Virus record (IMG/VR): IMGVR_UViG_3300032675_000001
Span: 62,001-126,000 of that record
DNA length: 64,000 nucleotides
Reading direction: 5' to 3' (one strand)
Below, piece by piece: positions 13,736 through 50,662 of this stretch. Numbering within the stretch: position 1 is the first letter of the stretch; the number at the start of each line of letters is the position of its first letter. The notes beneath the pieces are model-generated. The model was not told the origin of the DNA. It made no database searches and saw nothing but the letters and a program-made list of their open reading frames with translations. The position numbers and the translations under genes are program-made.

Positions 13736-15799
13736 TCAACGTGTTTCTTTCATCATATTGGGATCGTTTGGAGAAAAAGAGCCACGATTTCCGACCGCTG
13801 ATTTAACCTGATTTGGATTAAAAACTACCCAAACTTCACCAGACTTTGCATTGCTATTGTTCGGTATTGATTCATTGATAATAGCACCATCAAAGCCAAG
13901 CTTCTGTAAGGTTTTTACAAAGTGGTCACCTTCTGGTCCGTCAAACAGTTCCCAGCGTTCAAACTCATCAACATAATAATATATTGACCTCAAGTCAATA
14001 CCATTGTCTTTAAATCCTTGCACGGTTTCTTCGTTATCTAACATATGTGAAAGATTGTTATCTCTTAGATCAATGGGATTCTGTACTGAAAGATATACAG
14101 GCAAGATTCGTCCACCTGGCTTATATTCACCGGGGTAATCTGGTCTTTCAATGAAGAGTTCAGCAAACTTTGGGTCAACCGCAAAGAATGATCCATGACG
14201 ATCTACTTCAAATGTCATACCCAGTGCACTTGCAAATCCCGTTCCATGTGTGTTGAATGTATCAAAGTCTTTAGTAGTTGCATGGTAGAATACTATTGGC
14301 TTATGTCCATCCCATGCGTGAGTATGCTGTAACCAGTCATCCATTCTCTTTTGACGATGTTGCTGATCGTATCCTGGGAAGAGTTCTTGTTGTTCTTCTG
14401 CTTCCGATAACATTCTTGACAACTGCTGAATGAAACTTTCAGCTATCTTACCGTTTGGATTAGCTTGGGGAGGGATACCTGCTCGTGAAACTTTAGACCC
14501 AAGCCTTTTTGCATTGTCTTTAATGGAATCTGGTTTCACATCTACAGTAAGAGCAGTCTTAAAACGAGGATCGTTCTTTTCTTTTGCAGATGGAATGTAA
14601 CCTGAGGCTTCATCAATATACGGAAGACGAACATTCTTGTATTGTTCTGGATCATATGGTTTGATTTCTGCTGGTTTCTTAGGCTTTGGACCTCTCCAAC
14701 CGCGTTCCCATGCTGCTGCACCCTTTCGTGCTGCTATATTAACGTCCTCACCGCGATACTTTGCTGATCTGACAAAGTGATCAATCACTTGCTGCTTAGT
14801 GGTATAGGCTTCGTCAAGTTCTTCATCCTCAGCAAAGATACCACGCTTGAAGCGTTCCCATTCACCTTTCATTGCAGCAGCAGCCATTTGCTTTTCATAC
14901 GCTGCTTTAGCTAACTTAGCCTTGAATGGATCAACGGGCTGTTGCTGACCAATTTCTTCTGGTTTGATATTATACTGCTTCATCATTTTATCAATGATTC
15001 GCTTTATACTTTCAATCTCAGATGGAGTTCTTCCGGCAGTGTTTTGTAGCTTTTTGATCTTTAGTAGAGCATCATCGCGAGTACCTGCTTCTTCAATGCT
15101 TAATGCTTGACTATGCAGCTTGTCGCTTAGATCATAAAGTTTATCAATGCCACCTTGTGTTCTAATAGCCTTATAGGCAAGATTTTCTGGACTGAACTCG
15201 CCGCCTTTTGACAGTCCTGCTTTACGGTAGCGTTTGATCAGACCGATAACATCATCTATTCTTTTTACACTTTTGGTCTTTAGTGCAAGATCAATCAAAT
15301 CTGACAATTTATTGTATTTTGCTTGGGTTGCATTCTGATCAAAGTTGGCTTTACGTTTAACTGGATGCCTAATCCATTTGTTATGAAGAATACTATATTC
15401 ACCAAGCGATACTACAGGAAGATTAGAATCCTGAACATACACTTCAATCGGAACTCCATGAACTGTGATATCATGTGAGTCGTTGTATAGGGTTTTCTTT
15501 GCGTTGAACAGTTCCTGATAAACTTCATTGTCAGGAAGTTTGGACATGTCTACAATGATGTGAAGATCAAGGTCACTGTGTGGAGTATATGAATAGGCAG
15601 CGTTTGAACCTGATATTCTCACATCTTCTACGTTGACATCTTTGATGCCAAGCGCCGAAATGAAGTCTTCTGCTATATCTAACAGCGCATTTCTAACGTC
15701 TGGATCAAGCTTGTTGTTTACCCATAGCTTTGGGTTAAGTTCATCATGAAACTTAACAGCGTCAGATAATTTAAATGAATGAAGTTCTTTAATGTCCAT
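13736..15799 (-). CDS. Polyvalent protein: Pol-beta-like nucleotidyltransferase + DUF2786-like helix + ADP-ribosyltransferase-like (ART-PolyVal-type) domain
   Basis: GSNAAYSY...SDLDLH; LLKIKKLQ...IIDKMMKQYNI; FYHAT, GSFFA, YLS..NP, GFDG.I and VVFNPNQVKSA.GN.G.F motifs. Late-promoter motif at 15805..15811. Confidence 0.75.
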   Translation of the reverse strand: MDIKELHSFKLSDAVKFHDELNPKLWVNNKLDPDVRNALLDIAEDFISALGIKDVNVEDVRISGSNAAYSYTPHSDLDLHIIVDMSKLPDNEVYQELFNAKKTLYNDSHDITVHGVPIEVYVQDSNLPVVSLGEYSILHNKWIRHPVKRKANFDQNATQAKYNKLSDLIDLALKTKSVKRIDDVIGLIKRYRKAGLSKGGEFSPENLAYKAIRTQGGIDKLYDLSDKLHSQALSIEEAGTRDDALLKIKKLQNTAGRTPSEIESIKRIIDKMMKQYNIKPEEIGQQQPVDPFKAKLAKAAYEKQMAAAAMKGEWERFKRGIFAEDEELDEAYTTKQQVIDHFVRSAKYRGEDVNIAARKGAAAWERGWRGPKPKKPAEIKPYDPEQYKNVRLPYIDEASGYIPSAKEKNDPRFKTALTVDVKPDSIKDNAKRLGSKVSRAGIPPQANPNGKIAESFIQQLSRMLSEAEEQQELFPGYDQQHRQKRMDDWLQHTHAWDGHKPIVFYHATTKDFDTFNTHGTGFASALGMTFEVDRHGSFFAVDPKFAELFIERPDYPGEYKPGGRILPVYLSVQNPIDLRDNNLSHMLDNEETVQGFKDNGIDLRSIYYYVDEFERWELFDGPEGDHFVKTLQKLGFDGAIINESIPNNSNAKSGEVWVVFNPNQVKSAVGNRGSFSPNDPNMMKETR

Positions 15800-16422: not shown

Positions 16423-16944
16423 TTAAATCGTCAGACCCAACATGTCAAGACCTTTTTTATGGAAACATTTGGTATTCTCAATCGCTTCTTCTGTACTCAA
16501 TGCGGCGAAACCCTTAGAATGCATTTCTTCATCCGGTAGAATTTTGGAAAACACCTCACGAATGTCTTCGTCAATCTCATTGTCTGCGGCCAATGCACGA
16601 ATGCGAACAAGACGCATTGCTTCGGCATGATGACCTGCTGCGGTTACTTCTTCAAAAGTCTGGACATTTCCTAGGATTTCACTCCAATAACGGTCATGTT
16701 CATATGTTGGGGTTGGCAGTTCAATGTTACGAGCGGCGAGAAGTTCTCCTACCCAGTCGCGGTGCTTAGCTTCATCAGAAGCAATCTTTTCCAAAAGTAC
16801 TTTGCCTTTTCCTTCTGTCGTTTTGGCGAGTGATTCAATTCGTTCTGCGGCAAGAGCTTCACCGATATATTGACGCTGCAACCAGTGATTAAGCTTTTCA
16901 GGAGATGCTTTTACCTCGTTGAGCCACTGTTCGGTAGTTTTCAT
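16423..16944 (-). CDS. Ferritin-like di-iron protein
   Basis: Two E...DExxH units (DEAKH, DEEMH). AGGAG RBS before MKTTEQ; the track start at 17007 lies inside the tmRNA. Confidence 0.8.
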   Translation of the reverse strand: MKTTEQWLNEVKASPEKLNHWLQRQYIGEALAAERIESLAKTTEGKGKVLLEKIASDEAKHRDWVGELLAARNIELPTPTYEHDRYWSEILGNVQTFEEVTAAGHHAEAMRLVRIRALAADNEIDEDIREVFSKILPDEEMHSKGFAALSTEEAIENTKCFHKKGLDMLGLTI

Positions 16945-16961
16945 GATTAATCTCCTATGTA

Positions 16962-17268
16962 AAGTGGCCCGTTCTGTTTCTAGGTGGAGCCGTACCCAGG
17001 AAATCATGCCGCTAGGGCAATATCCATAGTTGAGTTATCGTTTGCAGATAATTCTATTTAGTCTATAATGCGACTAACCAACCAGTCTACTCTCACCTTC
17101 AACTCGTAGTCGAATCCTAAATACGCCCCCATCAACTACTCTGAATCGCTGTGTTTCCGCCAGACAGCTTTTCACCCTTTATAGCGGCGGGTTATCAGAG
17201 TAGATGGTGGAGGCGAGGGGAGTCGCACCCCTGTCCTACGCAGCATTCAGTTTGTATCAACAACTGAT
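16962..17268 (-). ncRNA. ssrA: Circularly permuted (two-piece) tmRNA; outer ends approximate
   Basis: Acceptor piece ...GACAGGGGTGCGACTCCCCTCGCCTCCACCA ends at 17205. A 74-nt intervening segment (17131..17204) is closed by CTACTCTGA/TCAGAGTAG. The coding piece starts GGGGGCGTATTTAGGATTCGAC at 17130. Tag frame 17045..17004 = ANDNSTMDIALAA*. Confidence 0.95.
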
Positions 17269-17299
17269 AACTTACTTATACACTATTCACAGAAACATG

Positions 17300-17491
17300 T
17301 CAAGAAATAACTTGAACCATGTAGTTTTTAGATTTTTCCTCAAACTCTGCTCGTTTGCGATCCATATCAATCTTGCGAAGGAGCAAAGGATCGTTGGGCT
17401 TGATCACATATCTGTTTTTTTCAAGAACAGCCCGAAGACGTTTTTGATCATCCGTGAAAGTTTCACGGTCGCTGTTTATTTTTCTAGCCAT
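17300..17491 (-). CDS. Hypothetical basic protein
   Basis: Short ORF in operon orientation. Confidence 0.55.
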   Translation of the reverse strand: MARKINSDRETFTDDQKRLRAVLEKNRYVIKPNDPLLLRKIDMDRKRAEFEEKSKNYMVQVIS

Positions 17492-18658: not shown

Positions 18659-19001
18659 CTGCTATTTCAAACAGGTCCCCATATGGGTTCTGTTCTTTTT
18701 CGTATTGCTCTTTTGCATTCTGAATACGTGCTTGTGAAATCTTGATATAATCTGGATCAAGATCAATGCCAATATAGTTGAAGCCTTCAAGCATCGCAGC
18801 CTTACCTGTTGAACCAGAACCATTGAATGGATCAAGAACAGTCCCACCCTTTGGTGTTACTAAACGACACAGATACTTCATCAAGTCAGTTGGTTTTACC
18901 GCCTACGTGGGGTGAGTATTTAAATACTCACCCCGAACCTCCTTTACATATATCTTCAACTCATTTGGTAGCGAGTCGAAGTCTTTCTTTGATAATTCCA
19001 T
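18651..19001 (-). CDS. C-terminal fragment of the N6/N4 DNA methyltransferase, with an in-frame TAG at 18903..18905
   Basis: MELSKKDFDSLPNELKIYVKEVRGEYLNTHPT*AVKPTDLMKYLCRLVTPKGGTVLDPFNGSGSTG... carries the SAM-binding DPFxGSG motif that 19712..22267 lacks. Confidence 0.8.
18909..18934. repeat. Perfect 26-bp palindrome
   Basis: GGGGTGAGTATTTAAATACTCACCCC. Confidence 0.95.
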
Positions 19002-19734
19002 TGTTATTTTTCATTTCCTCTATGACTTCATGCTCCCAGAATCTCAAAACAGTAAATCCACATTTCCTCAAATATGCATCTTGTGATTTGTCTAAGTTCA
19101 TTCTTTTTTGCTGCCTAAGGTCCGGAATTCCATTTTTCAATTTTGATGGATGTCCGTGCCAGTAATCACCATCCCATTGAATGATGATTTTTTTATCCGG
19201 TATTAGAACGTCAACTGATATTTTGTCTGCTATTAGTATTTGTTCTTCAAATATAATATCCTCGTTCAATAATATCTGCCTTCCGAGTAACTCTAATTTG
19301 TTTGGTCCTTTTTTTCTATTCTGTGCCATGTTTCCATTAGTAGATGCTCTCCTGATCCATTCTTCATCTGTATTTCTGCATTCTATGGTGCAGTAAGTTG
19401 GGTTATTATCTTTCAGTCGGCTTTTACTCCAATAGAAAGTATTATGACACATTTTACATTCAAATGCAACTTTATTTTTTGCCTGAAAATCATTAGCACA
19501 CTTATGACTGCAGAAATGATTAGCATGTGCCTCTAATGTCGCCAGACTCCTATACACTTGATTACCACACATAGCACATTCAACGATTCGTCCAGTTTTT
19601 CTTTGTGGTTTAGGGCTGGTCCTGCTACAATATGCACTGCAATATTGCCTATTTGCTGGCATATCTGCAGTATGAGGTTTTCCGCATCCCTTACATATTA
19701 TCGTTCTCGTTTTATATTTGTTTTTTCTGTACAT
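18961..19734 (-). mobile_element. Free-standing Vsr/DUF559-like endonuclease with N-terminal zinc-ribbon repeats, inserted in the methyltransferase gene
   Basis: Three CxxC...YCS/FCS/YCT..C units; VD..I...IIIQWDGDYWH and D....D..L...G.TVLRFWE motifs. Confidence 0.85.
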
Positions 19735-22267
19735 TTAATACTCCATTACTTTCGTTTGAAGTATTTATATGTTTTTTGATTTTTTCAATAATATCTGGTG
19801 GCGTATTTTCATCAATCAGATAACGCGAAACTTTATCCAATCCGCTGTTACGATCTGATCTGCTGGCTTTAGCAGCATAATACATTCTCTGAACATTCTC
19901 ATAATCCAGTGTGTCTTCCTCTGTGAATTCACAAGACTTAAAAAATCTTGCTGCTGATCCTGTGTCGCCTCGTTTCGCTGATGGAACTCTTTGATATTCA
20001 CCATAACAGTTGGTATTATCATCTCCTGTATGTGATGGTTCTGTTCCCTTTACATCGCCTTGTTGACCCTTACTTTCAGGAAACAATGCGACAACTTCAT
20101 CACTGCCATCATGAATGATATTAGCGGGGAATCTTCCTTTTAGTTCTGGTCGGTCAAACTCAGTTCTAGGTCTATGATCAGATTTTCTATAGTAACAGTT
20201 TGTGCAAATATCTTGATCTTCTTCTACTGGATTTAGTGTATCAGGAGCATAATCATCGCATCCCATATATTCCGAAGAGCCAGCAAGTGATCCTGACTTC
20301 GCCGTGCATTTTCCTTGCGGCGTTGCACTTAGCTTATCCTCTTCCGACATATAATCAACCCGACAATCATCAATATTGATTCCACCAGTTCCATGCTTTA
20401 GAACATTCTTCGCTACAGTCTTTTCAGATAGTGGCTTCCTAGCAACGCAAATAGGCTCCCACGCTGGCTTCAGTGCCGTGCCCCAGCCATCCCATTGTTT
20501 TGCTTCTTCTGTTGCTGGTGCAGTAACGTCCCAAGTTTCATAAACAGTTGTTCCACCAACAGTTGGCAATGCGGATTTTCCACTAGTGCTTCTAGCTTTA
20601 ATCTGCTGACCAATTACCCTTCGTTCAATATTATTATAAATGCCGGTCAATCTTTCAGAAGTTTCTTCATCCGGATTGAGCACTTCCTTCATGCGTTTCC
20701 ATTTTTCCTGTGGTGGCAACAAATTAACCCATGGGTCAAACTTTTTTCCATCTGCTGGTAGTGTTAGATAGTTACTTGCTCTGAACCCACACTCAGTGTC
20801 AATCTGCTTTCGCGTTTTCCCACTTTTTTTAAATATATTAGTCAGGATATTCTTTAGTTCAATTACTTCTTCATCATCGGCAGGATTTTCCATATGCTTA
20901 TCAATAGCCTTACCGATGTTCATAGACTTAGGAAAGCCAGAGTTTCCAGTAGTGAATGCTTTACCATCCCTTACTGCGACGAATGCGCCAGTAGGAACCT
21001 TAACACACCAAATCTTACCTTCATATTCAATCGGAGTTACAGTTGCCAGAGTGGTTTTATGTCCTTTCCAGCCTCGTATAACTTGTGATCCGAGTTGTTG
21101 GCAAATAACATCAGATTCTCCGCCCGATTGTCCAATGGATCGTGGTTTATATGATGCACTACTTCCGTGCGAGTAAGCATTCTGTTTAAATGCTTCGCTA
21201 CTATTAGACGGTGCTCCATGACATACCCGTCTCTCCTCGCCATAGGCAGGAAGTCCACTGGACAACGAACATACTTCGCTCCTTTGTAGTTTCCATGTGA
21301 GCGACGGTATGTTACTCCACCCTTCCAAGCAGGGTTGGTTTCTCCAGTCATGCGGTCCACCAAATCTTGTTCCGACTTCTCGGACCAGTTGGCTCTCCCC
21401 TTGTGTGCGTGAGCTTTCCATTCTATTCCCCGCAAAACTCCGTTGCATGTTTTTGAACACACAGGAGTTTTCACTCGTTGTAAATGTTTTATATTTCTGT
21501 AGAACGTTATCCCACATACTTGACAAGTATGTTGTTGTTTTCCAATATGTTCGTTTATAGGTGGCGATCCAGTATTGGAACGACCTATTGACTTGTTGGA
21601 ACATTGTTTGCTGCAAGTTTTGTTTCTTATAGCCTGTTCTTTGGTATGAGTCTGATAAGGATTGTTGCAAACCAGACAGGTTTTCCAAAAAGGGTATATT
21701 CTCTTGCGAACTAAGTTCTTCTGCAAAAGCGAATATTTCTCTTCCGCCTCGTTCAACAATGCAACGATGGTTTCGGCTGACGATTTGGTCTGTATGATCA
21801 GATTGTATTCTGTAAGCGGTATCCTTGATGTCATATTCATAAACTTCCTCAACTGGCATATAACTATATGTTTGAGTATATTTATCATAACACAAGACTA
21901 AATCGTTTGGTTTTATTGCTGTGTATGGTTTTATGCCGTTTGGCGTCACAATCTCTGTGTCATCAGATAGACAGCCATAGACCCACCCAATCTGATCGCG
22001 AATATCAAATCCAGCGTCTTCAATCGCTACCACCATTCTATGATATGTGCGAGTACCAGAGAATGCCAACAGGTGTCCGCCTGGCTTCAATACACGCATC
22101 ACCTCTGACCACATCTCAACACTATATGCGATGCCAGAACTGTCCCACGACTTACCCATGAAACCAAGTTCATATGGCGGATCAGTTACCACAGAATCAA
22201 CAGAGTTTTCTTCCATGGTTTTTAATACGTCAACACAGTTGCCGTTATGTAATACAAAGCTACTCAT
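19712..22267 (-). CDS. N6-adenine/N4-cytosine DNA methyltransferase (beta-type motif order), N-terminal fragment, intein-containing
   Basis: DPPY, W.YG|SGFPKS after intein removal, LKPAWEPI..ARKP, GRFPAN, SAARFF and AKASRSDRN motifs. Confidence 0.92.
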   Translation of the reverse strand: MSSFVLHNGNCVDVLKTMEENSVDSVVTDPPYELGFMGKSWDSSGIAYSVEMWSEVMRVLKPGGHLLAFSGTRTYHRMVVAIEDAGFDIRDQIGWVYGCLSDDTEIVTPNGIKPYTAIKPNDLVLCYDKYTQTYSYMPVEEVYEYDIKDTAYRIQSDHTDQIVSRNHRCIVERGGREIFAFAEELSSQENIPFLENLSGLQQSLSDSYQRTGYKKQNLQQTMFQQVNRSFQYWIATYKRTYWKTTTYLSSMWDNVLQKYKTFTTSENSCVFKNMQRSFAGNRMESSRTQGESQLVREVGTRFGGPHDWRNQPCLEGWSNIPSLTWKLQRSEVCSLSSGLPAYGEERRVCHGAPSNSSEAFKQNAYSHGSSASYKPRSIGQSGGESDVICQQLGSQVIRGWKGHKTTLATVTPIEYEGKIWCVKVPTGAFVAVRDGKAFTTGNSGFPKSMNIGKAIDKHMENPADDEEVIELKNILTNIFKKSGKTRKQIDTECGFRASNYLTLPADGKKFDPWVNLLPPQEKWKRMKEVLNPDEETSERLTGIYNNIERRVIGQQIKARSTSGKSALPTVGGTTVYETWDVTAPATEEAKQWDGWGTALKPAWEPICVARKPLSEKTVAKNVLKHGTGGINIDDCRVDYMSEEDKLSATPQGKCTAKSGSLAGSSEYMGCDDYAPDTLNPVEEDQDICTNCYYRKSDHRPRTEFDRPELKGRFPANIIHDGSDEVVALFPESKGQQGDVKGTEPSHTGDDNTNCYGEYQRVPSAKRGDTGSAARFFKSCEFTEEDTLDYENVQRMYYAAKASRSDRNSGLDKVSRYLIDENTPPDIIEKIKKHINTSNESNGVLNVQKKQI
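19732..19769 (-). promoter_or_regulatory. TATAAATA late promoter plus RBS-sequestering hairpin for the Vsr-like endonuclease
   Basis: TATAAATA at 19762..19769. AATACTTCA pairs with TGGAGTATT, which contains the GGAG RBS. Confidence 0.7.
20942..21973 (-). mobile_element. Intein (344 aa) in the DNA methyltransferase
   Basis: Begins CLSDDTEIVT; block B SRNHR; block F/G YEGKIWCVKVPTGAFVAVRDGKAFTTGN followed by Ser. Removal restores YG-SGFPKS. Confidence 0.93.
21037..21840 (-). CDS. HNH homing endonuclease encoded in the +1 frame inside the intein
   Basis: CxxC zinc repeats, NPAWKGG, and GYVMEHRLIVAKHL...EVVHHINHDPLDNRAENL. GAGGA RBS 5 nt before ATG 21840; ATAAATA at 21879..21885. Confidence 0.9.
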   Translation of the reverse strand: MNMTSRIPLTEYNLIIQTKSSAETIVALLNEAEEKYSLLQKNLVRKRIYPFWKTCLVCNNPYQTHTKEQAIRNKTCSKQCSNKSIGRSNTGSPPINEHIGKQQHTCQVCGITFYRNIKHLQRVKTPVCSKTCNGVLRGIEWKAHAHKGRANWSEKSEQDLVDRMTGETNPAWKGGVTYRRSHGNYKGAKYVRCPVDFLPMARRDGYVMEHRLIVAKHLNRMLTRTEVVHHINHDPLDNRAENLMLFANNSDHKLYEAGKDIKPLWQL

Positions 22268-28297: not shown

Positions 28298-29776
28298 TTA
28301 AGAGCAAACTTTGACACCGTATAGCAACTCGAAACGATCCGCATCGGCGCGACCATTTACCATAGGTTCGCCACGAATGTTTAATGATGTGTTGAGGAGC
28401 ATAGGACAACCTGTCTCCTCATACCAACGCTCTAGCAGTCTTCTGATTCCTGATCCATCATTCGGAACGCTCTGAACACGGCTAGTCCCGTCAGCATGAA
28501 CGATAGCAGGGAATAGGTCAGGATGCCTACAAGGAGCGACGACTTGCATATACCTACTGTTATTCCAGCCGTAAGGCATATCAAAATAGTCAGACAAATG
28601 CTCCTCCAAAATGACTGGAGCAAACGGTCTGAACTTTTGTCTGCGCTTGATTTCATTTACTTTGTCCTTAATCTCTGGTCCTCTAGGATCGGCAAGTAGA
28701 GAACGATTCCCCAATGCTCTTGGTCCGAACTCTGCTCTTCCACTTGCTACTCCTACAATCTTGTGTGTATACAACTCTTTTACGATATTGTCAACAGGAT
28801 AATCACCTTTGATTTCATGACCGAGGAATGCATCCTTCCATGCTAATCTTTTACCATATCCAAGAGCGGCTGCACCAAGAGAGTTTCCTGCATCACCGGG
28901 ATTTGGCATGATCCATATGTTATTAAAGAATGCACCAAGTTTACGATTGGCAGAACAGTTCAATGCAACGCCACCGCCAAACACAAGATTGCGACTCTTC
29001 GCAAAGATTCGAGCTTTAATCATGACTGTAGAAATCAACGATTCAGTGAGAACCTGAGTTGATGCTGCAATGTCCATCTCATTCGCATCTTTACCCAAAT
29101 ATTCGTCTTGTAATCCTGTGTGAAGATTAACGGCAAAATCTAGGGTTGATCTATCCTCTATCAAATCTTCAAGCTTGTTAACATGAATTGGATTACCATA
29201 TGCAGCCATTCCCATAAGGATATACTCTTCATCTAATGGACGCAATCCTACATAGGCAGTCATGGCAGAATACATCAATCCTATTGAATCTGGATATTTC
29301 TTGCCCCACAGACGTTTATATACTGCTCGTCCATTTTTGTCATATGATGCATCCCATATAGACATAGTATCAAGTTCACCAATAGCATCAATGATGACTA
29401 CCGTAGCATTATCATACGGGCTAGTTTGAAATCCAGCAGCAGCATGTGACAGGTGATGGCTGTGAGTACTCAGGGTAGTAAAATCAAACCGATCATAGAT
29501 ATCATGACCCATGATCTTGGAAATGCTTAGAGGACCAATCGGCTGTTTAGCCTTGAACTGCCTGATAGCTTTTAGCCACGGCTTTTCATAGTAGTGAAGT
29601 TCATACTCACCATTGGTATATTTTAGAGCATCATCCACCAATGCATGACATAGATTGGCATCATGTTTATTCTTACTGTAACGCTCACTGTGCCCTGCAA
29701 ACTTGATTTCACCATGATCATCCACAACAGTTATGGCAGCATCATGGAATCCGCAACTAATACCAATATAGTTCAT
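28298..29776 (-). CDS. Carbamoyltransferase (NodU/CmcH family)
   Basis: HDAA, HHLSHA, DAIGE, GGVALNC, GRAEFGPRALGNRS, FRPFAP, HADGTSRVQ and LLNTSLN motifs. Confidence 0.95.
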   Translation of the reverse strand: MNYIGISCGFHDAAITVVDDHGEIKFAGHSERYSKNKHDANLCHALVDDALKYTNGEYELHYYEKPWLKAIRQFKAKQPIGPLSISKIMGHDIYDRFDFTTLSTHSHHLSHAAAGFQTSPYDNATVVIIDAIGELDTMSIWDASYDKNGRAVYKRLWGKKYPDSIGLMYSAMTAYVGLRPLDEEYILMGMAAYGNPIHVNKLEDLIEDRSTLDFAVNLHTGLQDEYLGKDANEMDIAASTQVLTESLISTVMIKARIFAKSRNLVFGGGVALNCSANRKLGAFFNNIWIMPNPGDAGNSLGAAALGYGKRLAWKDAFLGHEIKGDYPVDNIVKELYTHKIVGVASGRAEFGPRALGNRSLLADPRGPEIKDKVNEIKRRQKFRPFAPVILEEHLSDYFDMPYGWNNSRYMQVVAPCRHPDLFPAIVHADGTSRVQSVPNDGSGIRRLLERWYEETGCPMLLNTSLNIRGEPMVNGRADADRFELLYGVKVCS

Positions 29777-29792
29777 ACAACATATCACCCGA

Positions 29793-36013: not shown

Positions 36014-37237
36014 TTAGAGTCCACTGTCCTGCTTCAGGGTGTGGCTCAAATCTTTTTTTTGGCGTGTGTTGCCATAGTGGACAATTGGTCCACTATGTTG
36101 ATATGTATTAATACGTCTCCAAGGATCAACTACCGTGCAGCGATCGGGAAACTTTAGATCAGCAACATAATGTTCCCAATATCCGATTAAATAAACATCA
36201 GTCGTATCAGCAGCAAGATCGGTATCACCAGTATGAATGTCATAGTAGTTTACATTTCCACCATGCTGTTCAACATAATATCCGACCAACATTGAAGAAG
36301 AACCATTCGTATAGTGCACTCCGGGCTTATATGCCTTACCGACGATGGTTACATTATTGCCATACTCAAGACACTTCTTGGCCATGTTTTCAGCCTGCAC
36401 TTCACGTGCTCGCATAATAGCGTCAAAAAGGTCATATCCAAGACCAAGATTTTCTGCCATATAACGCAGAGCAATATTGTCACGTGGATGACATGCCCCA
36501 CCATCACCCATTCCAGCCATCATATATGCTGGACCTGTGATGCGATAGTTTGATCTTGCAAGAGCGCCTGTTACCACATCAACGTCAATATTGCCATTCT
36601 TTTCGGCAACGTCCTGAATCATGTTAACGATACCAACCTTTGCTGAAATAAAAGTGTTGTAGAAAATCTTAATGGATTCTGCTTCATCCCATGTACCAAC
36701 TTCATAACGTGGATCATTCTGCATGAATACCTTGTAGAAATCAATCAACTCAGCAGCATCACCAGTAATAGAGCCATCCTCTGTACCAATAATGACCATT
36801 TCTGGATTAACCATATCCCACTTGATTGTTCCCATTGCAATAAGATATGGATTGTAAATAAACCGTGCATTAGTGATGCAAGGACGTAATTGACTACGAA
36901 CTGTTCCCGGAAGCACTGTGCTAATGAGCACTACCAACTGGTCTTGGCTTACCCATTTATTAACTTCTTTGAGAATATCAGTTACGATAGTGTAATCAAA
37001 GTCCTTATTAGGAAGATGACTTGTTGGAGTTTCTCCACCATAGATAGGATCATGTGGAGTAGGAGCAGCAATAAAGATAATATCTCTATCTGCTACTGCA
37101 TCCTGAATGGTATTGCACATTGGGAATAATGGAGTTCTTGGTTCAACATCATATCCAACTACATCATAGTGTTCTGACATAACTTCGGCACAGTCTTGCC
37201 CGAGTTTGCCGCATCCGATCATTGCTACTTTTTTCAT
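36014..37237 (-). CDS. UDP-glucose/GDP-mannose 6-dehydrogenase family protein
   Basis: GCGKLG, STVLPGT, K...N, GGACHPRD and G.AYK motifs. TATAAATA at 37243..37250. Confidence 0.92.
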   Translation of the reverse strand: MKKVAMIGCGKLGQDCAEVMSEHYDVVGYDVEPRTPLFPMCNTIQDAVADRDIIFIAAPTPHDPIYGGETPTSHLPNKDFDYTIVTDILKEVNKWVSQDQLVVLISTVLPGTVRSQLRPCITNARFIYNPYLIAMGTIKWDMVNPEMVIIGTEDGSITGDAAELIDFYKVFMQNDPRYEVGTWDEAESIKIFYNTFISAKVGIVNMIQDVAEKNGNIDVDVVTGALARSNYRITGPAYMMAGMGDGGACHPRDNIALRYMAENLGLGYDLFDAIMRAREVQAENMAKKCLEYGNNVTIVGKAYKPGVHYTNGSSSMLVGYYVEQHGGNVNYYDIHTGDTDLAADTTDVYLIGYWEHYVADLKFPDRCTVVDPWRRINTYQHSGPIVHYGNTRQKKDLSHTLKQDSGL

Positions 37238-42792: not shown

Positions 42793-43094
42793 AATGTCTC
42801 TTCTATATATTTCTTTAGTTCTTTTAAAGTGGTATCGTAATCTTCTACTACACCGATCATGCTGTTTTTGACTTTAGGTTCAATGACTACAGTATAACAA
42901 CAGTTGTTATTGGTGGTCCATCTGAATACTCGGTTATAAATCCATCGTTCACTGTAAGTTGGTTCACCGAAAAAGCCTTTATATCCCGAAATGAAACCAT
43001 ATGACTTGTAATCATTAGCATTAGGATGAAAATCAAGCTGCTCCAGCTTTTTGAGATTATATAACTTCTTCAAGAAATATAACATGTCAGACAT
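42789..43094 (-). CDS. Hypothetical protein
   Basis: Coupled ORF; start uncertain. Confidence 0.6.
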   Translation of the reverse strand: MSDMLYFLKKLYNLKKLEQLDFHPNANDYKSYGFISGYKGFFGEPTYSERWIYNRVFRWTTNNNCCYTVVIEPKVKNSMIGVVEDYDTTLKELKKYIEETL

Positions 43095-44368
43095 TAACTT
43101 GCTGCCCATTCATAGACTTCTTTAATCTCTGGTACAATGTCTTCAAACTTCTCGTTACGAAACTGATCCAACTCATCATTGAACTGCTTGAACTCCAAAA
43201 TGCCGCCCTTGTTCTCATCACCTACGTTGAGGTTATAGATGATCATCTTGAAGCCGTTAAAGATGTCTACATTGTCCTTATACTTTTCCTGATACACACG
43301 GTAAAGTTCAGTGAGCCTACGCTTTACGTGGTTTGGCAGAATCATGATATTTGCATACCATGGATTAGTAGCCAGATTAAATCTAGGACTGGTCTTGGTA
43401 TCAATAAAACCATTGTCAATCATATAATCAAAAAAGTCTGCAAAGTGAAAGATGTTCCATATGGAAATAGTAGGTGTAATCTGAAACTGAACGTGTGGCA
43501 GTTCTTCCTTCAACTTCTTCATATTCTTGATAGTGCGGTCCCAGTCAGTTCCTTTACGCATACATTCAGCAAGAGCACCATGAGCATCAAGTGATGCCCA
43601 TACCTGAATGTTCTTGAACTTCTTCCAGTATTCAATCAAGTCTTTGTTCTTATAGCCATGTAGCGTAGAGAAGTTTGTAGTATAGTTTAACTCAATACTA
43701 TCTGCTTGACCCGATTCAATCCAATAATCAAGACATTCATAGTGTTCTGGTGTAATAATGATTTCACCACCAGCAAAATATACTTCCGTAACATCAGCAA
43801 GATATGGCTTTAACTTGACCATGAACTGTTGGTCTTCGTTATTATTAACAACTACTTTCTGACCGGGGAAATATTCATCCCACATTTCCTTGCCACGCTT
43901 GTCCAGAAACTCTTGTGCCCACTGTGATGAGCATGATGGACCACATGAGCGGCACTTCATGTTACAGAGGTTACTGAACCGAATATCCATATACTTCATT
44001 TCAAACTCAGATAGCGAACCATCTTCGTTTGTGTTTTCTGCAATATAGTTAACGTAGTCAAGACCTCTGCGACGATTATGAGACTGTCTCATCGTCCATG
44101 TGCCCATAAGTTCCAAGTCAAAGCAACGCTTACACTCTGGAACTTCCTCATCATTAAGCATTGCCTTACGAATCTCATTGTAACGATCACTGTTCATCAT
44201 TTCAATGATAGACTGATCTGGATCAATCTGTGCCACTGGCATATTACTATCAGCAACACAGCAAGGCATTACTCTTGAATCAGGCCATGCATGAAAGTGC
44301 ACCCATGGCAGAACACAAAAGTGCTTACCGTTGCATACCAGATTCTCAACTACGTTTTTATCAGCCAT
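43094..44368 (-). CDS. Radical SAM protein with N-terminal Twitch-like cluster
   Basis: FCVLPW.H...PCC, CNMKCRSC and AGGE motifs. Confidence 0.92.
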   Translation of the reverse strand: MADKNVVENLVCNGKHFCVLPWVHFHAWPDSRVMPCCVADSNMPVAQIDPDQSIIEMMNSDRYNEIRKAMLNDEEVPECKRCFDLELMGTWTMRQSHNRRRGLDYVNYIAENTNEDGSLSEFEMKYMDIRFSNLCNMKCRSCGPSCSSQWAQEFLDKRGKEMWDEYFPGQKVVVNNNEDQQFMVKLKPYLADVTEVYFAGGEIIITPEHYECLDYWIESGQADSIELNYTTNFSTLHGYKNKDLIEYWKKFKNIQVWASLDAHGALAECMRKGTDWDRTIKNMKKLKEELPHVQFQITPTISIWNIFHFADFFDYMIDNGFIDTKTSPRFNLATNPWYANIMILPNHVKRRLTELYRVYQEKYKDNVDIFNGFKMIIYNLNVGDENKGGILEFKQFNDELDQFRNEKFEDIVPEIKEVYEWAAS

Positions 44369-48935: not shown

Positions 48936-49213
48936 GACCACCTCAACAGAAACAAAATCATGTCGCGTTCATCGGTGAACTCGTAATAGTCATCCCAGTT
49001 GTTGTATGTCGCATTGTATTTTGATGCCATATCTGCGTTCCACTTAACCCAATGCATATATACACTACGACTGTCAGTTGGAGCAATGGCTTGATGCTCT
49101 TTGGAGATGTTATAAAACCATTGCTTCCGCACCGTGCGGCTGGCATCATCATGGACATATAGACGCAGATTATCCCTTGTTACATGGGATTCATTAGGTT
49201 CACTTCTTGACAT
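48932..49213 (-). CDS. F-x-L-R-W-S family protein
   Basis: Ends FTDERDMILFLLRWS. Confidence 0.75.
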   Translation of the reverse strand: MSRSEPNESHVTRDNLRLYVHDDASRTVRKQWFYNISKEHQAIAPTDSRSVYMHWVKWNADMASKYNATYNNWDDYYEFTDERDMILFLLRWS

Positions 49214-50577
49214 AAGCGGTAGAAATCCAACATCTCAGGGTACACGGTTAACAAGTCCGTCTCACGACGATCATCAATCTCATTGAACCAGTTGTAGAAA
49301 TCTCTACGTCCTTCAATGAGCTTCTGATCGCTATACACCGTTTCCGCCATATAGTCAACAACTCTTTTGAACTTTTCATACTCGATAGTAGAGAAAGCAT
49401 CGGCGCGGTCATCATCAAGGTTGTCTTCCATAAACTTCAATGACTCGCACATATATGGCATGAACTCATCCTTGGGAAGAATGTTCATGTCATACTGAAT
49501 CGGATCACGAAGATATGGAGTGTCAAAACGAATGATGTGCTGCTTGCGCTCTTCATCCCATCCATACTGCTTACGCCATTCAAGAAACTTCTCTAGAAGA
49601 CTCTTGAAGCTTGTCACACTGAAAATATTAAATGTGATCATGAATGTGATAGGAGACTGTGCCTTGCTTACATAGGTGTGGAAGTTCTTTTCCCACACAT
49701 CTAGGTCTAGTCCAGTGCGAATATACTCCGCACGTTCTCCCCATGTATCCATTGAAGTGAACAGCTTGAATGCTCTGATTTTACCTTCATCCTGTAGCTT
49801 TCGGACTTTGGTTGCAAGGCGATCAATCAGAATATTCTTCGTGCCTAGGTTTGAGTTAATGTTTAGTTCCAACCATGGCATTGGGTCTTCATCAATCTTG
49901 TCTAGCAGTTGCCATGTAGACTTGTGAAGAGTTGGTTCTCCGCCTGTGACACGCATGATGTTTAATGTTTGTCTCAGTTCAGGCCACCATTCCCAGAATG
50001 CATCAACATATGGGTTTTCTTCTTCACGTTGATAAAGTTTCATCCAGTCAATATCGCAGCGATGGTTCTTGACACTTGTTACCGGACCAAAATCTTCAAT
50101 CTCTTTGAAGTAGCGAGTTGAGTATTTTGGATGACAGTATCCGCATTTGAAATTGCATTCGTTGCCAAAGTTTATTTCCAAGTATTCCGGATTGATATTC
50201 TGATTCCAAGCACCCTTTGCTGTCTGTTCGTAACGTTCTTCTGTGAAGATAGAACTGTTGCGAATGTGTCGGTCAGAGATATAATCCTTACCCATTGCTT
50301 CCACGTTCCAGCAGTATTGACACCCTTTTGGCTTTTCTCCATTGAGCATCTGCTGACGCTCTAACTTCTTTTCAGTTGTATTGTGGAGAGCCGATGGATT
50401 ATCTTTTAGTTCACTCAATGGAATCTTGTGAGGAGCCGGGTGATAGCATGAATGCGTTTCCCCTGTCTGCAAGTAGATAGTCGTATGCATCCATTTTGCT
50501 AAACAGAAAGTCTTAGTAGAGTCAACGTCTATATAATCACGTATGCGTTTAATTCTGTCAACTTCGGATTCTTGCAT
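49180..50577 (-). CDS. Radical SAM protein with N-terminal Twitch-like cluster
   Basis: FCLAKW...SCYHP, C.YCW, CNFKCGYC and TGGEP motifs. Start moved to MQESEV. Confidence 0.92.
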   Translation of the reverse strand: MQESEVDRIKRIRDYIDVDSTKTFCLAKWMHTTIYLQTGETHSCYHPAPHKIPLSELKDNPSALHNTTEKKLERQQMLNGEKPKGCQYCWNVEAMGKDYISDRHIRNSSIFTEERYEQTAKGAWNQNINPEYLEINFGNECNFKCGYCHPKYSTRYFKEIEDFGPVTSVKNHRCDIDWMKLYQREEENPYVDAFWEWWPELRQTLNIMRVTGGEPTLHKSTWQLLDKIDEDPMPWLELNINSNLGTKNILIDRLATKVRKLQDEGKIRAFKLFTSMDTWGERAEYIRTGLDLDVWEKNFHTYVSKAQSPITFMITFNIFSVTSFKSLLEKFLEWRKQYGWDEERKQHIIRFDTPYLRDPIQYDMNILPKDEFMPYMCESLKFMEDNLDDDRADAFSTIEYEKFKRVVDYMAETVYSDQKLIEGRRDFYNWFNEIDDRRETDLLTVYPEMLDFYRLCQEVNLMNPM

Positions 50578-50594
50578 GGGCTTCTTTTCTGATG

Positions 50595-50662
50595 ATAAAT
50601 AGCTGTGAGTCGCGGAACAGACATTCCCACTCACTCTAACGCTATTAAGGAGCATCAGCATG
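50595..50662 (+). promoter_or_regulatory. Late promoter + conserved structured leader, copy A
   Basis: ATAAATA gct GTGAGT cgc GGAA cagaca TTCC c ACTCAC tctaac GCT attaagg AGC atcagc ATG. Confidence 0.8.

What the first reader, a model, noticed from the sequence alone, without database searches (positions are those of the whole stretch)
16962..17268. Phage-encoded circularly permuted two-piece tmRNA with tag ANDNSTMDIALAA
Seen: the 3' acceptor half with encoded CCA precedes the GGGGGCG 5' half. The 74-nt intervening segment is closed by a 9-bp stem; helix CTACG/CGTAG is present; TATAAGTA (late-like) lies at 17273..17280. Knowledge: permuted tmRNA is typical of Alphaproteobacteria and of some cyanobacterial and betaproteobacterial lineages, and an LAA ending is a ClpXP degron. 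Inference: alphaproteobacterial host. The long structured intervening piece might persist as a separate small RNA.
Basis: partly seen in the sequence, partly recalled or inferred. Interest (0 to 1): 0.6.

Follow-up and report, generated by a model that had tools for sequence, protein, structure and literature searches.

The report
Phage two-piece tmRNA, recombinant modules
A 360-kb lake-water phage carries a complete, circularly permuted (two-piece) tmRNA gene for rescuing stalled ribosomes. This is a known kind of phage gene, but this copy is a recombinant of two phage tmRNA lineages, and the phage also encodes the ClpX/ClpP protease that its tag should address.

Summary
ARAGORN calls a permuted tmRNA with tag ANDNSTMDIALAA. 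Rfam gives tmRNA_permuted 85.5 bits (cut-off 47) and alpha_tmRNA 65.8 bits (cut-off 50).

The host genome is a complete 360,683-bp freshwater virus with 43 tRNAs and no SmpB or AlaRS. It does encode ClpX, ClpP and a ClpA-like ATPase.

"TATAAGTA" is not late-like. It is the -10 box of a sigma-70-type promoter (TTGACA, 17 nt, TATAAG) that relatives conserve.

Phage two-piece tmRNAs are already described, so this is a new member of a known kind.

New here:
- Syntenic relatives share the tag module (at least 91% identity) but not the tRNA-like module (51-63%). The window's tRNA-like module matches a second phage tmRNA lineage at 91-97%, so the gene is a recombinant.
- The intervening segment is replaced wholesale between relatives (10-410 nt). 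Only the closing stem recurs.
- In some relatives the segment encodes a conserved 61-aa protein.

An alphaproteobacterial host is not shown. The window's intervening piece shows no special structure or conservation. Processing could not be tested because no RNA runs hold the stretch.

The parts
17275..17303 (-). Sigma-70-type promoter: -35 TTGACA (17303-17298), 17-nt spacer, -10 TATAAG (17280-17275). The predicted start is near A17268.
   Evidence: Read. It is the only TTGACA-N16-18-TATAA site in the window (0.29 expected). It is conserved in L031, L028 and L036. Ten sites of this class occur genome-wide, three of them in the tRNA cluster. The start site is inferred, not measured.
17205..17268 (-). 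Acceptor piece (64 nt): 5' strand of the terminal helix AUCAGU (17268-17263), P2a strand CGUAG (17240-17236), T stem AGGGG/CCCCU (17232-17228 / 17220-17216), T loop UGCGACU (17227-17221), 3' acceptor strand CGCCUCC (17215-17209), ACCA (17208-17205).
   Evidence: Rfam RF04321 alignment, sequence, and helix covariation across 18 phage tmRNAs.
17131..17204 (-). Intervening segment (IVS), 74 nt, removed on maturation. The 9-bp closing stem pairs 17203-17195 with 17144-17136.
   Evidence: whole segment z about -2.2 to -2.4, interior z -0.10. Identical only in copies of the same phage (L001, L039). Unrelated sequence fills this slot in all other relatives.
16963..17130 (-). Coding piece: 5' acceptor strand GGGGGCG (17130-17124), D-loop analogue, P2a strand CUACG (17109-17105), terminal-helix strand ACUGGU (17086-17081), the PK1 region, the tag frame and the 3' pseudoknot.
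   Evidence: The 3' boundary is taken from the alpha_tmRNA match (16963). The true 3' end was not measured.
17004..17045 (-). Tag reading frame: resume codon GCA (17045-17043), 13 codons giving ANDNSTMDIALAA, then stop UGA (17006-17004).
   Evidence: ARAGORN. Against the L028-type relative there are 5 substitutions in the 13 codons and all are synonymous, so the peptide is under purifying selection.
16963..17003 (-). 3' pseudoknot region with the AACAGAA motif typical of alpha-type tmRNA.
   Evidence: alpha_tmRNA alignment. Stem 2 covaries: window GGCUC/GGGCC, L002 UGGCCC/GGGCCA, L031 GCCGGA/UCCGGC, L036 GGGGAGG/CCUCCCC. About 85% similar to the same region of Sinorhizobium phage Phosso.
17090..17256 (-). 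Recombinant block: most of the acceptor piece, the IVS and the first ~41 nt of the coding piece (the whole tRNA-like domain plus helix 2). It is unlike the same block in syntenic relatives and matches a second phage tmRNA lineage.
   Evidence: blastn homology to L028, L031, L036 and L002 ends at 17089 in every case and resumes at about 17257-17262. Clade B contigs (L065, L067-L074) match at 95-97% (acceptor piece) and 91-93% (coding nt 1-45) but only 57-64% in the tag module.
16423..16944 (-). Downstream rubrerythrin/ferritin-like gene (173 aa). Its RBS GGAGA lies about 10 nt after the tmRNA. No terminator lies between, so it is probably co-transcribed.
   Evidence: Pfam PF02915, 2e-09. No terminator-like site on the minus strand. 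The start codon is conserved in L002/L038. Co-transcription is inferred.

Best explanation
This is a functional ssrA gene of a huge freshwater phage, in the circularly permuted (two-piece) form.

**Proposed mechanism**
1. Host RNA polymerase with its primary sigma factor starts at about 17268, from the strongest consensus promoter in the window.
2. The precursor folds so that the two acceptor-stem strands pair across the intervening segment, which is held shut by its 9-bp stem.
3. RNase P cuts 5' of G17130, and 3' maturation stops at the encoded CCA (17205). The 74-nt segment is discarded. What remains is a 64-nt acceptor piece paired to a coding piece of about 168 nt.
4. Host AlaRS charges the complex through G3.U70.
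5. With host SmpB (the phage has none) it enters stalled ribosomes, and translation resumes at GCA 17045.
6. The nascent chain receives ANDNSTMDIALAA. Its ALAA end sends the chain to ClpXP, and the phage supplies ClpXP itself (ClpX, ClpP and a ClpA-like ATPase).

**Likely benefit.** It keeps ribosomes free and recycles amino acids during an infection that degrades host mRNA and expresses 43 tRNAs, including an amber suppressor.

**Origin.** The gene is a recombinant. Its tRNA-like module comes from one phage tmRNA lineage and its tag module from another.

**Shown here:** gene identity, anatomy, covariation, selection on the tag, mosaic origin, presence of clpX/clpP, absence of smpB.
**Inferred:** the promoter's use, the processing sites, charging, the partners, and the benefit.
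For: - Detection: ARAGORN and two Rfam models score above their gathering thresholds.
- Helices: G3.U70 is invariant, and acceptor positions 4-6 and the T stem covary across 18 phage tmRNAs. Only 6 of 306 cells are non-canonical.
- Tag: against L028 there are 5 substitutions in the tag codons, all synonymous.
- Pseudoknot: 3' pseudoknot stem 2 covaries.
- Promoter: unique in the window and conserved in relatives.
- Partners: no SmpB or AlaRS in a 100%-complete genome.
- Protease: ClpP scores 265 bits on NF001368 (cut-off 249). ClpX scores 527 bits on NF003745 (cut-off 359) and has its zinc-binding domain plus GYVG, RKH and IGF loops. A ClpA-like ATPase is also present. The 353-kb relative G001 has ClpX about 7 kb from its tmRNA.
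- Stability: the same allele, letter for letter, lies on a 2.9-kb contig from an independent 2023 freshwater study.
- Mosaic origin.
- Precedent: phage two-piece tmRNAs are described in PMC9004378. tmRNA together with ClpXP and a suppressor tRNA occurs in phage G (PMC12484599) and Sinorhizobium phage AP-J-162 (PMC11242549).
Against: - There is no expression or processing evidence. None of the 20 public runs holding the stretch is RNA.
- The T loop (UGCGACU) has G where canonical tRNAs and tmRNAs have the second U, so its function is assumed from conservation within clade B only.
- No terminator follows the gene, so how the 3' end of the coding piece forms is unknown.
- Dependence on host SmpB means activity rests on an unknown host.
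- The link between the tag and the phage's own ClpXP is co-occurrence, not a test.
Confidence: 0.88

Rival explanations
1. The gene is a decoy or inhibitor. The phage RNA titrates host SmpB or blocks host trans-translation, as proposed for the TLD-only RNA of mycobacteriophage DS6A, and does not tag proteins.
For: The phage has no SmpB, so it must compete for the host's. TLD-only phage RNAs exist and inhibit tmRNA (PMC4131195, PMC11915505). The tRNA-like module has been swapped independently of the tag module, which suggests it is the part under the most dynamic selection.
Against: A complete tag frame is kept, with resume codon, stop and an ALAA end. It evolves by synonymous change only (5 of 5 against L028). 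The 3' pseudoknot is kept by compensatory changes. The phage carries the matching ClpXP. None of this would be maintained for a pure decoy.
Confidence: 0.05
2. The gene is a recently captured host gene or attachment-site remnant: a passenger picked up from an alphaproteobacterial host chromosome, since tmRNA genes are common integration sites, with no role for the phage.
For: The alpha_tmRNA model passes. tmRNA genes are frequent island and prophage targets (PMC4383910, PMC9004378).
Against: The gene is complete, not a 3' fragment. It sits at a syntenic position in at least five related phage lineages, and homologues occur in many IMG/VR contigs and in phage Phosso. BLAST against 401 alphaproteobacterial genomes hit only tRNA-Ala(CGC) 3' halves and no tmRNA. 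It has a phage-type consensus promoter shared with the tRNA cluster.
Confidence: 0.03
3. The intervening segment is the real product. The tmRNA frame serves as a processing scaffold that releases the 74-nt hairpin as a stable regulatory small RNA.
For: All 14 distinct intervening segments are closed by a stem: 9-14 perfect pairs in 13, and 5 pairs extended past a bulge in L031. They would be released with defined ends by tRNA-processing enzymes. In some relatives the slot holds a conserved protein gene, so cargo in this slot can be functional.
Against: In the window the interior folds no better than shuffled sequence (z -0.10). It has no Rfam match at E<=1 and no copy elsewhere in the genome. 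Phages whose flanking genes are 96-98% identical carry unrelated sequence in the slot. There are no RNA data.
Confidence: 0.04

Closest known systems
Two-piece (circularly permuted) tmRNA of Alphaproteobacteria, e.g. Caulobacter crescentus (Keiler, Shapiro & Williams 2000; Rfam RF01849)
   Same: Same gene order: acceptor piece with CCA, then intervening segment, then coding piece. It has G3.U70, a tag starting ANDN and ending LAA, and a 3' pseudoknot with the AACAGAA motif. It scores 65.8 bits against a cut-off of 50.
   Different: It is encoded by a virus. The T loop is UGCGACU and the D-region is AGGAUUCGA, instead of the alpha-type GGCGGUA and AGGAUCGA that its own relatives carry. No similarity beyond tRNA-Ala-like stretches was found in 401 alphaproteobacterial genomes.
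Phage-encoded two-piece tmRNAs of marine myophages (OM43 phage Melnitz, pelagimyophages; Buchholz et al. 2022, PMC9004378)
   Same: A permuted, alpha-type ssrA in a lytic aquatic phage, downstream of a sigma-70-type early promoter. That survey found 53 of 133 unique phage tmRNA forms to be two-piece, 50 of them from marine or aquatic phages.
   Different: The habitat is freshwater and the genome is 360 kb. No glutamine riboswitch was found. The phage also encodes ClpX and ClpP. Module recombination and replacement of the intervening segment were not described there.
Permuted tmRNA of Sinorhizobium phage Phosso (PV764938.1, 349596-350198, minus strand); tmRNA also reported for Sinorhizobium phage AP-J-162 (PMC11242549)
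   Same: A jumbo phage distantly related by its MoxR ATPase (44%) and ClpX (50%). It has a permuted tmRNA (113 bits), tag ANDNVSTKVALAA, a very similar 3' pseudoknot and a similar 5' end.
   Different: The host is a known alphaproteobacterium. It has an alpha-type T loop, an intervening segment of about 410 nt and its own terminator. The gene is not annotated in the record, and ARAGORN misses it.
One-piece phage tmRNAs (mycobacteriophage Bxz1 group, Bacillus phage G; PMC4131195, PMC12484599)
   Same: A phage-borne ssrA alongside many tRNAs. Phage G also has ClpX, ClpP and a suppressor tRNA.
   Different: Those have the standard gene order and need no split into two pieces. RF00023 finds no standard tmRNA in this genome.
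Intervening sequences of bacterial 23S rRNA (my own knowledge, not tested here)
   Same: Sporadic, strain-variable inserts closed by a long stem and removed from the mature RNA, some carrying a small ORF. This resembles the behaviour of the tmRNA intervening slot in this phage group.
   Different: A different RNA and a different excision route (RNase III, against RNase P plus 3' trimming). This is an analogy only.

Membership tests
Permuted (two-piece) tmRNA | Covariance-model match above the curated threshold | tested here: met
   RF04321 scores 85.5 bits (gathering score 47). ARAGORN calls a permuted tmRNA.
Permuted (two-piece) tmRNA | Circular permutation: the 3' acceptor half with CCA lies upstream of the 5' acceptor half | tested here: met
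   CCA ends at 17205, and G1 is at 17130 on the same (minus) strand.
Permuted (two-piece) tmRNA | 7-bp acceptor stem with G3.U70 (AlaRS identity) and a T arm | tested here: met
   GGGGGCG/CGCCUCC. G3.U70 is invariant in 18 phage homologues, while positions 4-6 and the T stem covary.
Permuted (two-piece) tmRNA | Tag reading frame with a resume codon, a stop and a hydrophobic C-terminal degron | tested here: met
   GCA at 17045 through UGA at 17004, giving ANDNSTMDIALAA. All 5 substitutions against L028 are synonymous.
Permuted (two-piece) tmRNA | Pseudoknots flanking the tag | tested here: inconclusive
   Stem 2 of the 3' pseudoknot is supported by compensatory changes in four lineages. PK1 is invariant among relatives, so it says nothing either way.
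Permuted (two-piece) tmRNA | Precursor cleaved into two RNAs (RNase P at G1, 3' end at CCA) | not testable with these tools
   No RNA run holds the stretch. The laid runs were DNA contigs.
Permuted (two-piece) tmRNA | Works with SmpB | not testable with these tools
   No SmpB is encoded in the complete phage genome, so a host SmpB must be assumed.
Alphaproteobacterial tmRNA lineage (RF01849) | Scores above the gathering threshold and above the beta and cyano models | tested here: met
   alpha 65.8 bits (cut-off 50), beta 38.8 (cut-off 84), cyano 26.8 (cut-off 70).
Alphaproteobacterial tmRNA lineage (RF01849) | Alpha-type tRNA-like domain: T loop GGCGGUA and reduced D-region AGGAUCGA | tested here: not met
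   The window has UGCGACU and AGGAUUCGA. The alpha-type forms are present in relatives L002, L028, L031, L036 and Phosso.
Alphaproteobacterial tmRNA lineage (RF01849) | 3'-terminal pseudoknot with the AACAGAA motif | tested here: met
   alpha_tmRNA alignment at 16999-16963, with covariation.
T4-type late promoter (TATAAATA, no -35 box) | TATAAATA consensus without a -35 element | tested here: not met
   The sequence is TATAAGTA with a perfect TTGACA 17 nt upstream. The same two-box layout occurs in relatives.

The most novel reading that the evidence does not exclude
In this group of aquatic phages the permuted tmRNA gene is a modular platform. The tRNA-like cassette is exchanged between lineages by recombination, perhaps to match a new host's SmpB, AlaRS or RNase P, or to escape an RNA-targeting defence. 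The intervening slot, cut out with exact ends by tRNA-processing enzymes, is an exchangeable cargo site. It delivers unrelated small RNAs and, in some lineages, a small mRNA for a conserved 61-aa basic protein. On this reading the window's 74-nt piece would be one such cargo and not junk.
Probability: 0.2. Interest if true: 0.7.

Novelty: new member of a known kind. Interest (0 to 1): 0.42.

Why it matters
Taken alone, the gene adds one more phage two-piece tmRNA to a list that already holds dozens.

The wider value lies in three points.

1. A complete huge-phage genome encodes tmRNA, ClpX, ClpP and a ClpA-like ATPase together, but not SmpB. The phage appears to bring most of a tag-and-destroy quality-control pathway with it. 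This is directly testable.
2. Natural variants give a clean comparative data set. They keep the tag module but swap the tRNA-like module, and they replace the intervening segment wholesale while always keeping a closing stem. This shows which parts of a two-piece tmRNA precursor matter for processing and for partner recognition.
3. The tmRNA type is a weak host predictor, because related phages carry alpha-like, beta-like and hybrid forms.

ARAGORN called three of the sixteen loci scanned for a tmRNA here (it was run on 13 of the 18 genes in the covariation set), so such genes are probably under-annotated in phage records.

Tried and rejected
- **RNA evidence.** The look-up of sequencing runs listed 20 holders, all DNA, from lake water or freshwater, so processing at 17205/17130 could not be tested. 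Read laying (4,501 letters, under the 6,000 limit) showed only that the allele is identical in an independent study.
- **Host, route 1.** Close relatives of the UDP-glucose dehydrogenase in GTDB genomes are scattered over unrelated MAGs, probably mis-binned phage DNA, so they give no host signal.
- **Host, route 2.** BLAST of the tmRNA against 401 genomes of the class of an alphaproteobacterial SAG hit only tRNA-Ala(CGC) genes.
- **Host, route 3.** ClpX is about 50% identical to ClpX from every kind of phage and is uninformative.
- **Stop-codon recoding.** I tested this because of the tRNA(CUA). ORF coverage rises about equally whichever stop is opened, so there is no evidence for recoding. 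No other genetic code was used.
- **Origin of the tRNA-like domain.** It does not derive from the phage's own tRNA-Ala genes, which are different sequences.
- **Other RNA families in the intervening segments.** Rfam at E<=1 found none.
- **The relatives' IVS protein.** No hit in Pfam, PHROGs, PDB sequences or the Atlas. The AlphaFold model has low confidence (pLDDT 63.5), so no fold search was run.
- **Not used.** Complex prediction (no protein pair is in question) and the large representative protein search.

Full report
**1. What is in the window**

The feature is on the minus strand.
- ARAGORN finds one tmRNA in the 64-kb window. It is marked permuted, lies at 16913-17297, and has tag ANDNSTMDIALAA.
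- Rfam 15 gives tmRNA_permuted (RF04321) at 17268-17004 with 85.5 bits against a gathering score of 47. It gives alpha_tmRNA (RF01849) at 17307-16963 with 65.8 bits against 50.

Reading the minus strand gives this order:
- a promoter: TTGACA at 17303-17298, 17 nt, TATAAG at 17280-17275;
- an acceptor piece of 64 nt (17268-17205) ending in an encoded CCA;
- a 74-nt intervening segment (17204-17131);
- a coding piece that starts with GGGGGCG at 17130 and runs to about 16963.

The acceptor stem is GGGGGCG/CGCCUCC with G3.U70. The T arm is AGGGG-UGCGACU-CCCCU. CGUAG (17240-17236) pairs with CUACG (17109-17105). The tag frame runs from GCA at 17045 to UGA at 17006-17004. The 9-bp stem that closes the intervening segment appears in the MFE and centroid folds. 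The precursor as a whole folds into the T arm and acceptor stem unaided.

**2. Genomic setting**

- The window is bases 62001-126000 of a single 360,683-bp contig. It is an IMG/VR virus record with direct terminal repeats, rated 100% complete, 41% G+C.
- ARAGORN finds 43 tRNAs, mostly at 230-256 kb. One has anticodon CUA at 216380. There is only this one tmRNA.
- Neighbouring genes match phage families: HNH endonucleases, a DNA methyltransferase, an ADP-ribosyltransferase of polyvalent proteins, a MoxR ATPase and a VWA protein.
- By protein, the nearest isolates are jumbo phages of Proteobacteria: PA5oct 51%, Sinorhizobium phage Phosso 44%, Atu_ph07 and SCTP-2.
- The DNA occurs in lake-water and freshwater metagenomes from 17 studies. 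In an independent 2023 study a 2.9-kb contig covers 15477-18376 without a single difference.

**3. The promoter**

- TTGACA-N16-18-TATAA occurs once in the window, against 0.29 expected.
- The same layout stands in front of the tmRNA in L031 (TTGACA, 17 nt, TATAAG), L028 (TATAAA) and L036.
- Ten such sites occur in the whole genome, three of them in the tRNA cluster.
- The start predicted 7 nt after the -10 box (about 17268) coincides with the first base of the RF04321 match and with the 5' strand of the terminal helix.

The 5' end of the acceptor piece may therefore be the primary transcript end. This is inferred.

**4. Evidence of function**

I collected 18 phage permuted tmRNAs: IMG/VR and metagenome contigs, plus phage Phosso. 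Across them G1-C, G2-C and G7-C are constant and G3.U70 is invariant. Acceptor positions 4-6 and the T stem change by compensatory pairs. Only 6 of 306 pair cells are non-canonical, and those are in the heuristically placed helix 2a of the most distant members.

The tag is under purifying selection. The L028-type gene differs from the window at five positions in the 13 codons, and all five are synonymous. L002 has one synonymous change and one I-to-F change. Stem 2 of the 3' pseudoknot is kept by double changes in four lineages.

A decoy RNA or a dead passenger would not show this pattern.

**5. Partners**

The phage encodes no SmpB and no AlaRS, so it must use the host's. It does encode three Clp proteins:
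- a true ClpP: 265 bits on NF001368 (cut-off 249), but only 94 bits on the head-maturation model (cut-off 120);
- a true ClpX: 527 bits on NF003745 (cut-off 359);
- a ClpA-like ATPase of 755 aa.

The ClpX keeps the zinc-binding CxxC pairs, Walker A, and the GYVG, RKH and IGF loops. From established work on E. coli ClpX, the RKH and pore loops recognise the C-terminal LAA of the ssrA tag.

The 353-kb relative G001 also has ClpX (52% identity), about 7 kb from its own tmRNA.

Co-occurrence of tmRNA, ClpX, ClpP and a suppressor tRNA has been reported for phage G (PMC12484599). AP-J-162 has tmRNA and Clp genes (PMC11242549). The combination is therefore not new, but here it gives a coherent mechanism: the phage brings both the tag template and the protease.

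**6. The gene is a recombinant**

Five lineages (L002/L038, L028 and copies, L031 and copies, L036, and the window type) share gene order around the tmRNA. Their flanking proteins are up to 98-99% identical: the ABC/GNAT protein 98.4%, MoxR 98.9%. At the DNA level, similarity to every one of them stops at window base 17089 and resumes at about 17257.

| Segment, window against these relatives | Identity |
|---|---|
| Tag module (74% in L036) | 91-92% |
| 3' half of the tRNA-like domain | 51-57% |
| 5' half of the tRNA-like domain | 59-63% |

The relatives have the alpha-type form (GGGCCUG/CAGGUCC, T loop GGCGGUA, AGGAUCGA).

A pattern scan of IMG/VR then found a second lineage, clade B (L065, L067-L074). 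Its acceptor piece is 95-97% identical to the window's, and its first 45 coding-piece bases are 91-93% identical. Its tag module is only 57-64% identical, with tags such as ANDNVAFALAA.

The window's gene is thus clade-B tRNA-like domain plus helix 2, joined to the clade-A tag module and pseudoknot. The breakpoints lie in short stretches common to both clades. I cannot say which form is ancestral.

An HNH endonuclease gene (18961-19734) is present only in this phage among the relatives. A tmRNA fragment, an HNH gene and a second tmRNA lie together in L083. Homing-endonuclease-driven gene conversion is a plausible cause. This is inference.

**7. The intervening segment**

- Length is 10 to 410 nt in the 18 genes.
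- Among 14 distinct segments, no two types share detectable similarity apart from L065/L067 and the few terminal bases. Copies of one type are 99-100% identical.
- All are closed by a stem that starts 0-2 nt after CCA and ends 4-5 nt before G1. It has 9-14 perfect pairs in 13 of them, and 5 pairs extended past a bulge in L031.
- The interiors fold no better than shuffled sequence (z from -1.3 to +1.5). The exceptions are L028 (-5.0) and L005 (-2.3).
- For the window, the whole segment has z about -2.2 and the interior -0.10.
- Rfam finds nothing in them at E<=1, and the window's segment has no second copy in the genome.

The closing stem is therefore a conserved requirement, most likely for presenting the two ends to the processing enzymes. 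The window's interior shows no sign of being a functional RNA.

The tmRNA database paper notes rare cargo in bacterial intervening sequences: a tRNA-Ala gene and a repetitive element (PMC11915505).

**8. Host**

For an alphaproteobacterial host:
- the alpha model passes, while beta (38.8 bits, cut-off 84) and cyano (26.8 bits, cut-off 70) fail;
- the 3' pseudoknot is alpha-type;
- the homologous gene in Phosso belongs to a Sinorhizobium phage.

Against, or neutral:
- the window's tRNA-like domain is not alpha-type;
- two related huge-phage contigs (L005, L007) carry permuted tmRNAs that score best on the beta model;
- 401 alphaproteobacterial genomes give only tRNA-Ala hits;
- Melnitz, a phage of a non-alpha host, carries an alpha-type tmRNA (PMC9004378);
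- the AMG-based search gave no signal.

The two-box promoter fits a host with a classical sigma-70. I put an alphaproteobacterial host at roughly one in three.

**9. Novelty**

Phage tmRNAs have been known since the Bxz1 group and phage G (PMC4131195). Buchholz et al. counted 53 two-piece forms among 133 unique phage tmRNA structures, mostly aquatic (PMC9004378). The 2025 tmRNA database lists 79 phage sequences and 11,946 permuted forms (PMC11915505).

The window's gene is therefore a new member of a known kind. I did not find the following described in the papers searched:
- exchange of the tRNA-like module between phage tmRNA lineages;
- wholesale replacement of the intervening segment between near-identical phages;
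- a conserved protein gene inside that segment (see the items noticed in passing).

**10. Limits and compliance**

- No expression, processing, charging or tagging data exist for this gene.
- Start and end points other than CCA and G1 are inferred.
- The host is unknown.

Noticed in passing
L028:6568-6750 (+); also L082:1391-1582, L085:1319-1504, L086:871-1056, L083:1501-1686: A conserved 61-63-aa basic protein is encoded INSIDE the intervening segment of permuted tmRNA genes on three different tmRNA backbones. There are four variants at 68-100% identity with 31 invariant residues. Synonymous sites are saturated (pS 0.71-0.92) while pN is 0.13-0.18, so it is a real gene. There is no hit in Pfam, PHROGs, PDB or the Atlas, and the AlphaFold model is a low-confidence helical hairpin. 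The window's own 74-nt segment has no ORF.
   Followed up: partly
Genome outside the window: G000:C1 289205-289780 (ClpP), L077:1189-2385 minus strand (ClpX), L076:1150-3417 minus strand (ClpA-like): The phage encodes bona fide ClpP and ClpX (both above NCBIfam cut-offs; ClpX has its zinc-binding domain and GYVG, RKH and IGF loops) plus a ClpA-like ATPase. These are the proteases that degrade ssrA-tagged proteins. Relative G001 has ClpX about 7 kb from its tmRNA.
   Followed up: yes
Genome outside the window: G000:C1 216380-216454: A tRNA with anticodon CUA (amber suppressor; ARAGORN labels it Pyl) lies apart from the main tRNA cluster. ORF coverage gives no sign that TAG is recoded. Readthrough of host TAG stops would create more non-stop stalls, which may be one reason to carry a tmRNA. 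This is inference.
   Followed up: partly
L080:1501-2103 minus strand = PV764938.1 349596-350198 (Sinorhizobium phage Phosso): A homologous permuted tmRNA (RF04321, 113 bits; tag ANDNVSTKVALAA; intervening segment about 410 nt; own terminator) lies in a 750-nt gap that carries no annotation in the GenBank record. ARAGORN misses it.
   Followed up: yes
L083:1380-2466: This contig holds, in order: a tmRNA fragment (acceptor 3' end with CCA, a 92-nt hairpin, then GGGGG); the small IVS-type ORF; an HNH endonuclease gene on the other strand; a consensus promoter; and a second, complete clade-B-like permuted tmRNA. It looks like a rearrangement product at a tmRNA locus.
   Followed up: partly
L002:4051-4175 (intervening segment of the L002/L038 tmRNA): This 125-nt segment contains a canonical-looking T arm (GAGGG-UUCGAUC-CCCUU) but no detectable tRNA or Rfam family.
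   Followed up: partly
window 18961-19734 (-) and 19712-22267 (-): An HNH/DUF559 endonuclease gene is present only in this phage among the syntenic relatives. It abuts an 851-aa methyltransferase-like ORF whose relatives match only in pieces (47-92% identity), as if the endonuclease gene had been inserted into a mosaic region.
   Followed up: partly
window 13736-15799 (-): A 687-aa protein with a C-terminal ART-PolyVal ADP-ribosyltransferase domain (PF18760, 2.7e-19). Among relatives it is patchily conserved, in blocks of 70-87% identity.
   Followed up: no
window 28298-50661 (-): A run of auxiliary-metabolism-like genes: a Nol/NodU-type carbamoyltransferase (28298-29788), UDP-glucose dehydrogenase (36014-37237) and two radical-SAM proteins (43094-44368, 49180-50661). 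This suggests sugar or surface-polysaccharide modification. The closest GTDB matches of the dehydrogenase are short contigs in unrelated MAGs, probably mis-binned phage DNA.
   Followed up: partly
L005:1471-1972, L007:958-1276 (minus), L085:1245-1688: Other huge-phage contigs of the same broad group carry permuted tmRNAs that score best on the beta model (65.8 and 76.9 bits, below the cut-off of 84). Their tags differ (ANDSVYALAA; a frame ending NDELFALVA; a long frame in L085). Unlike the window's gene, they have their own intrinsic terminators.
   Followed up: partly
L001-L007, L028, L029, L031, L032, L080: ARAGORN called the permuted tmRNA at only 3 of the 16 loci scanned for one here: the window, L001 (a copy of the window's phage) and L005. 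It was run on 13 of the 18 genes in the covariation set. Rfam RF04321 found a tmRNA at every locus tested with it. L003 and L004 are flank loci that hold no tmRNA. Phage two-piece tmRNAs are probably under-annotated (against 24, 32, 36, 67, 83, 95).
   Followed up: yes
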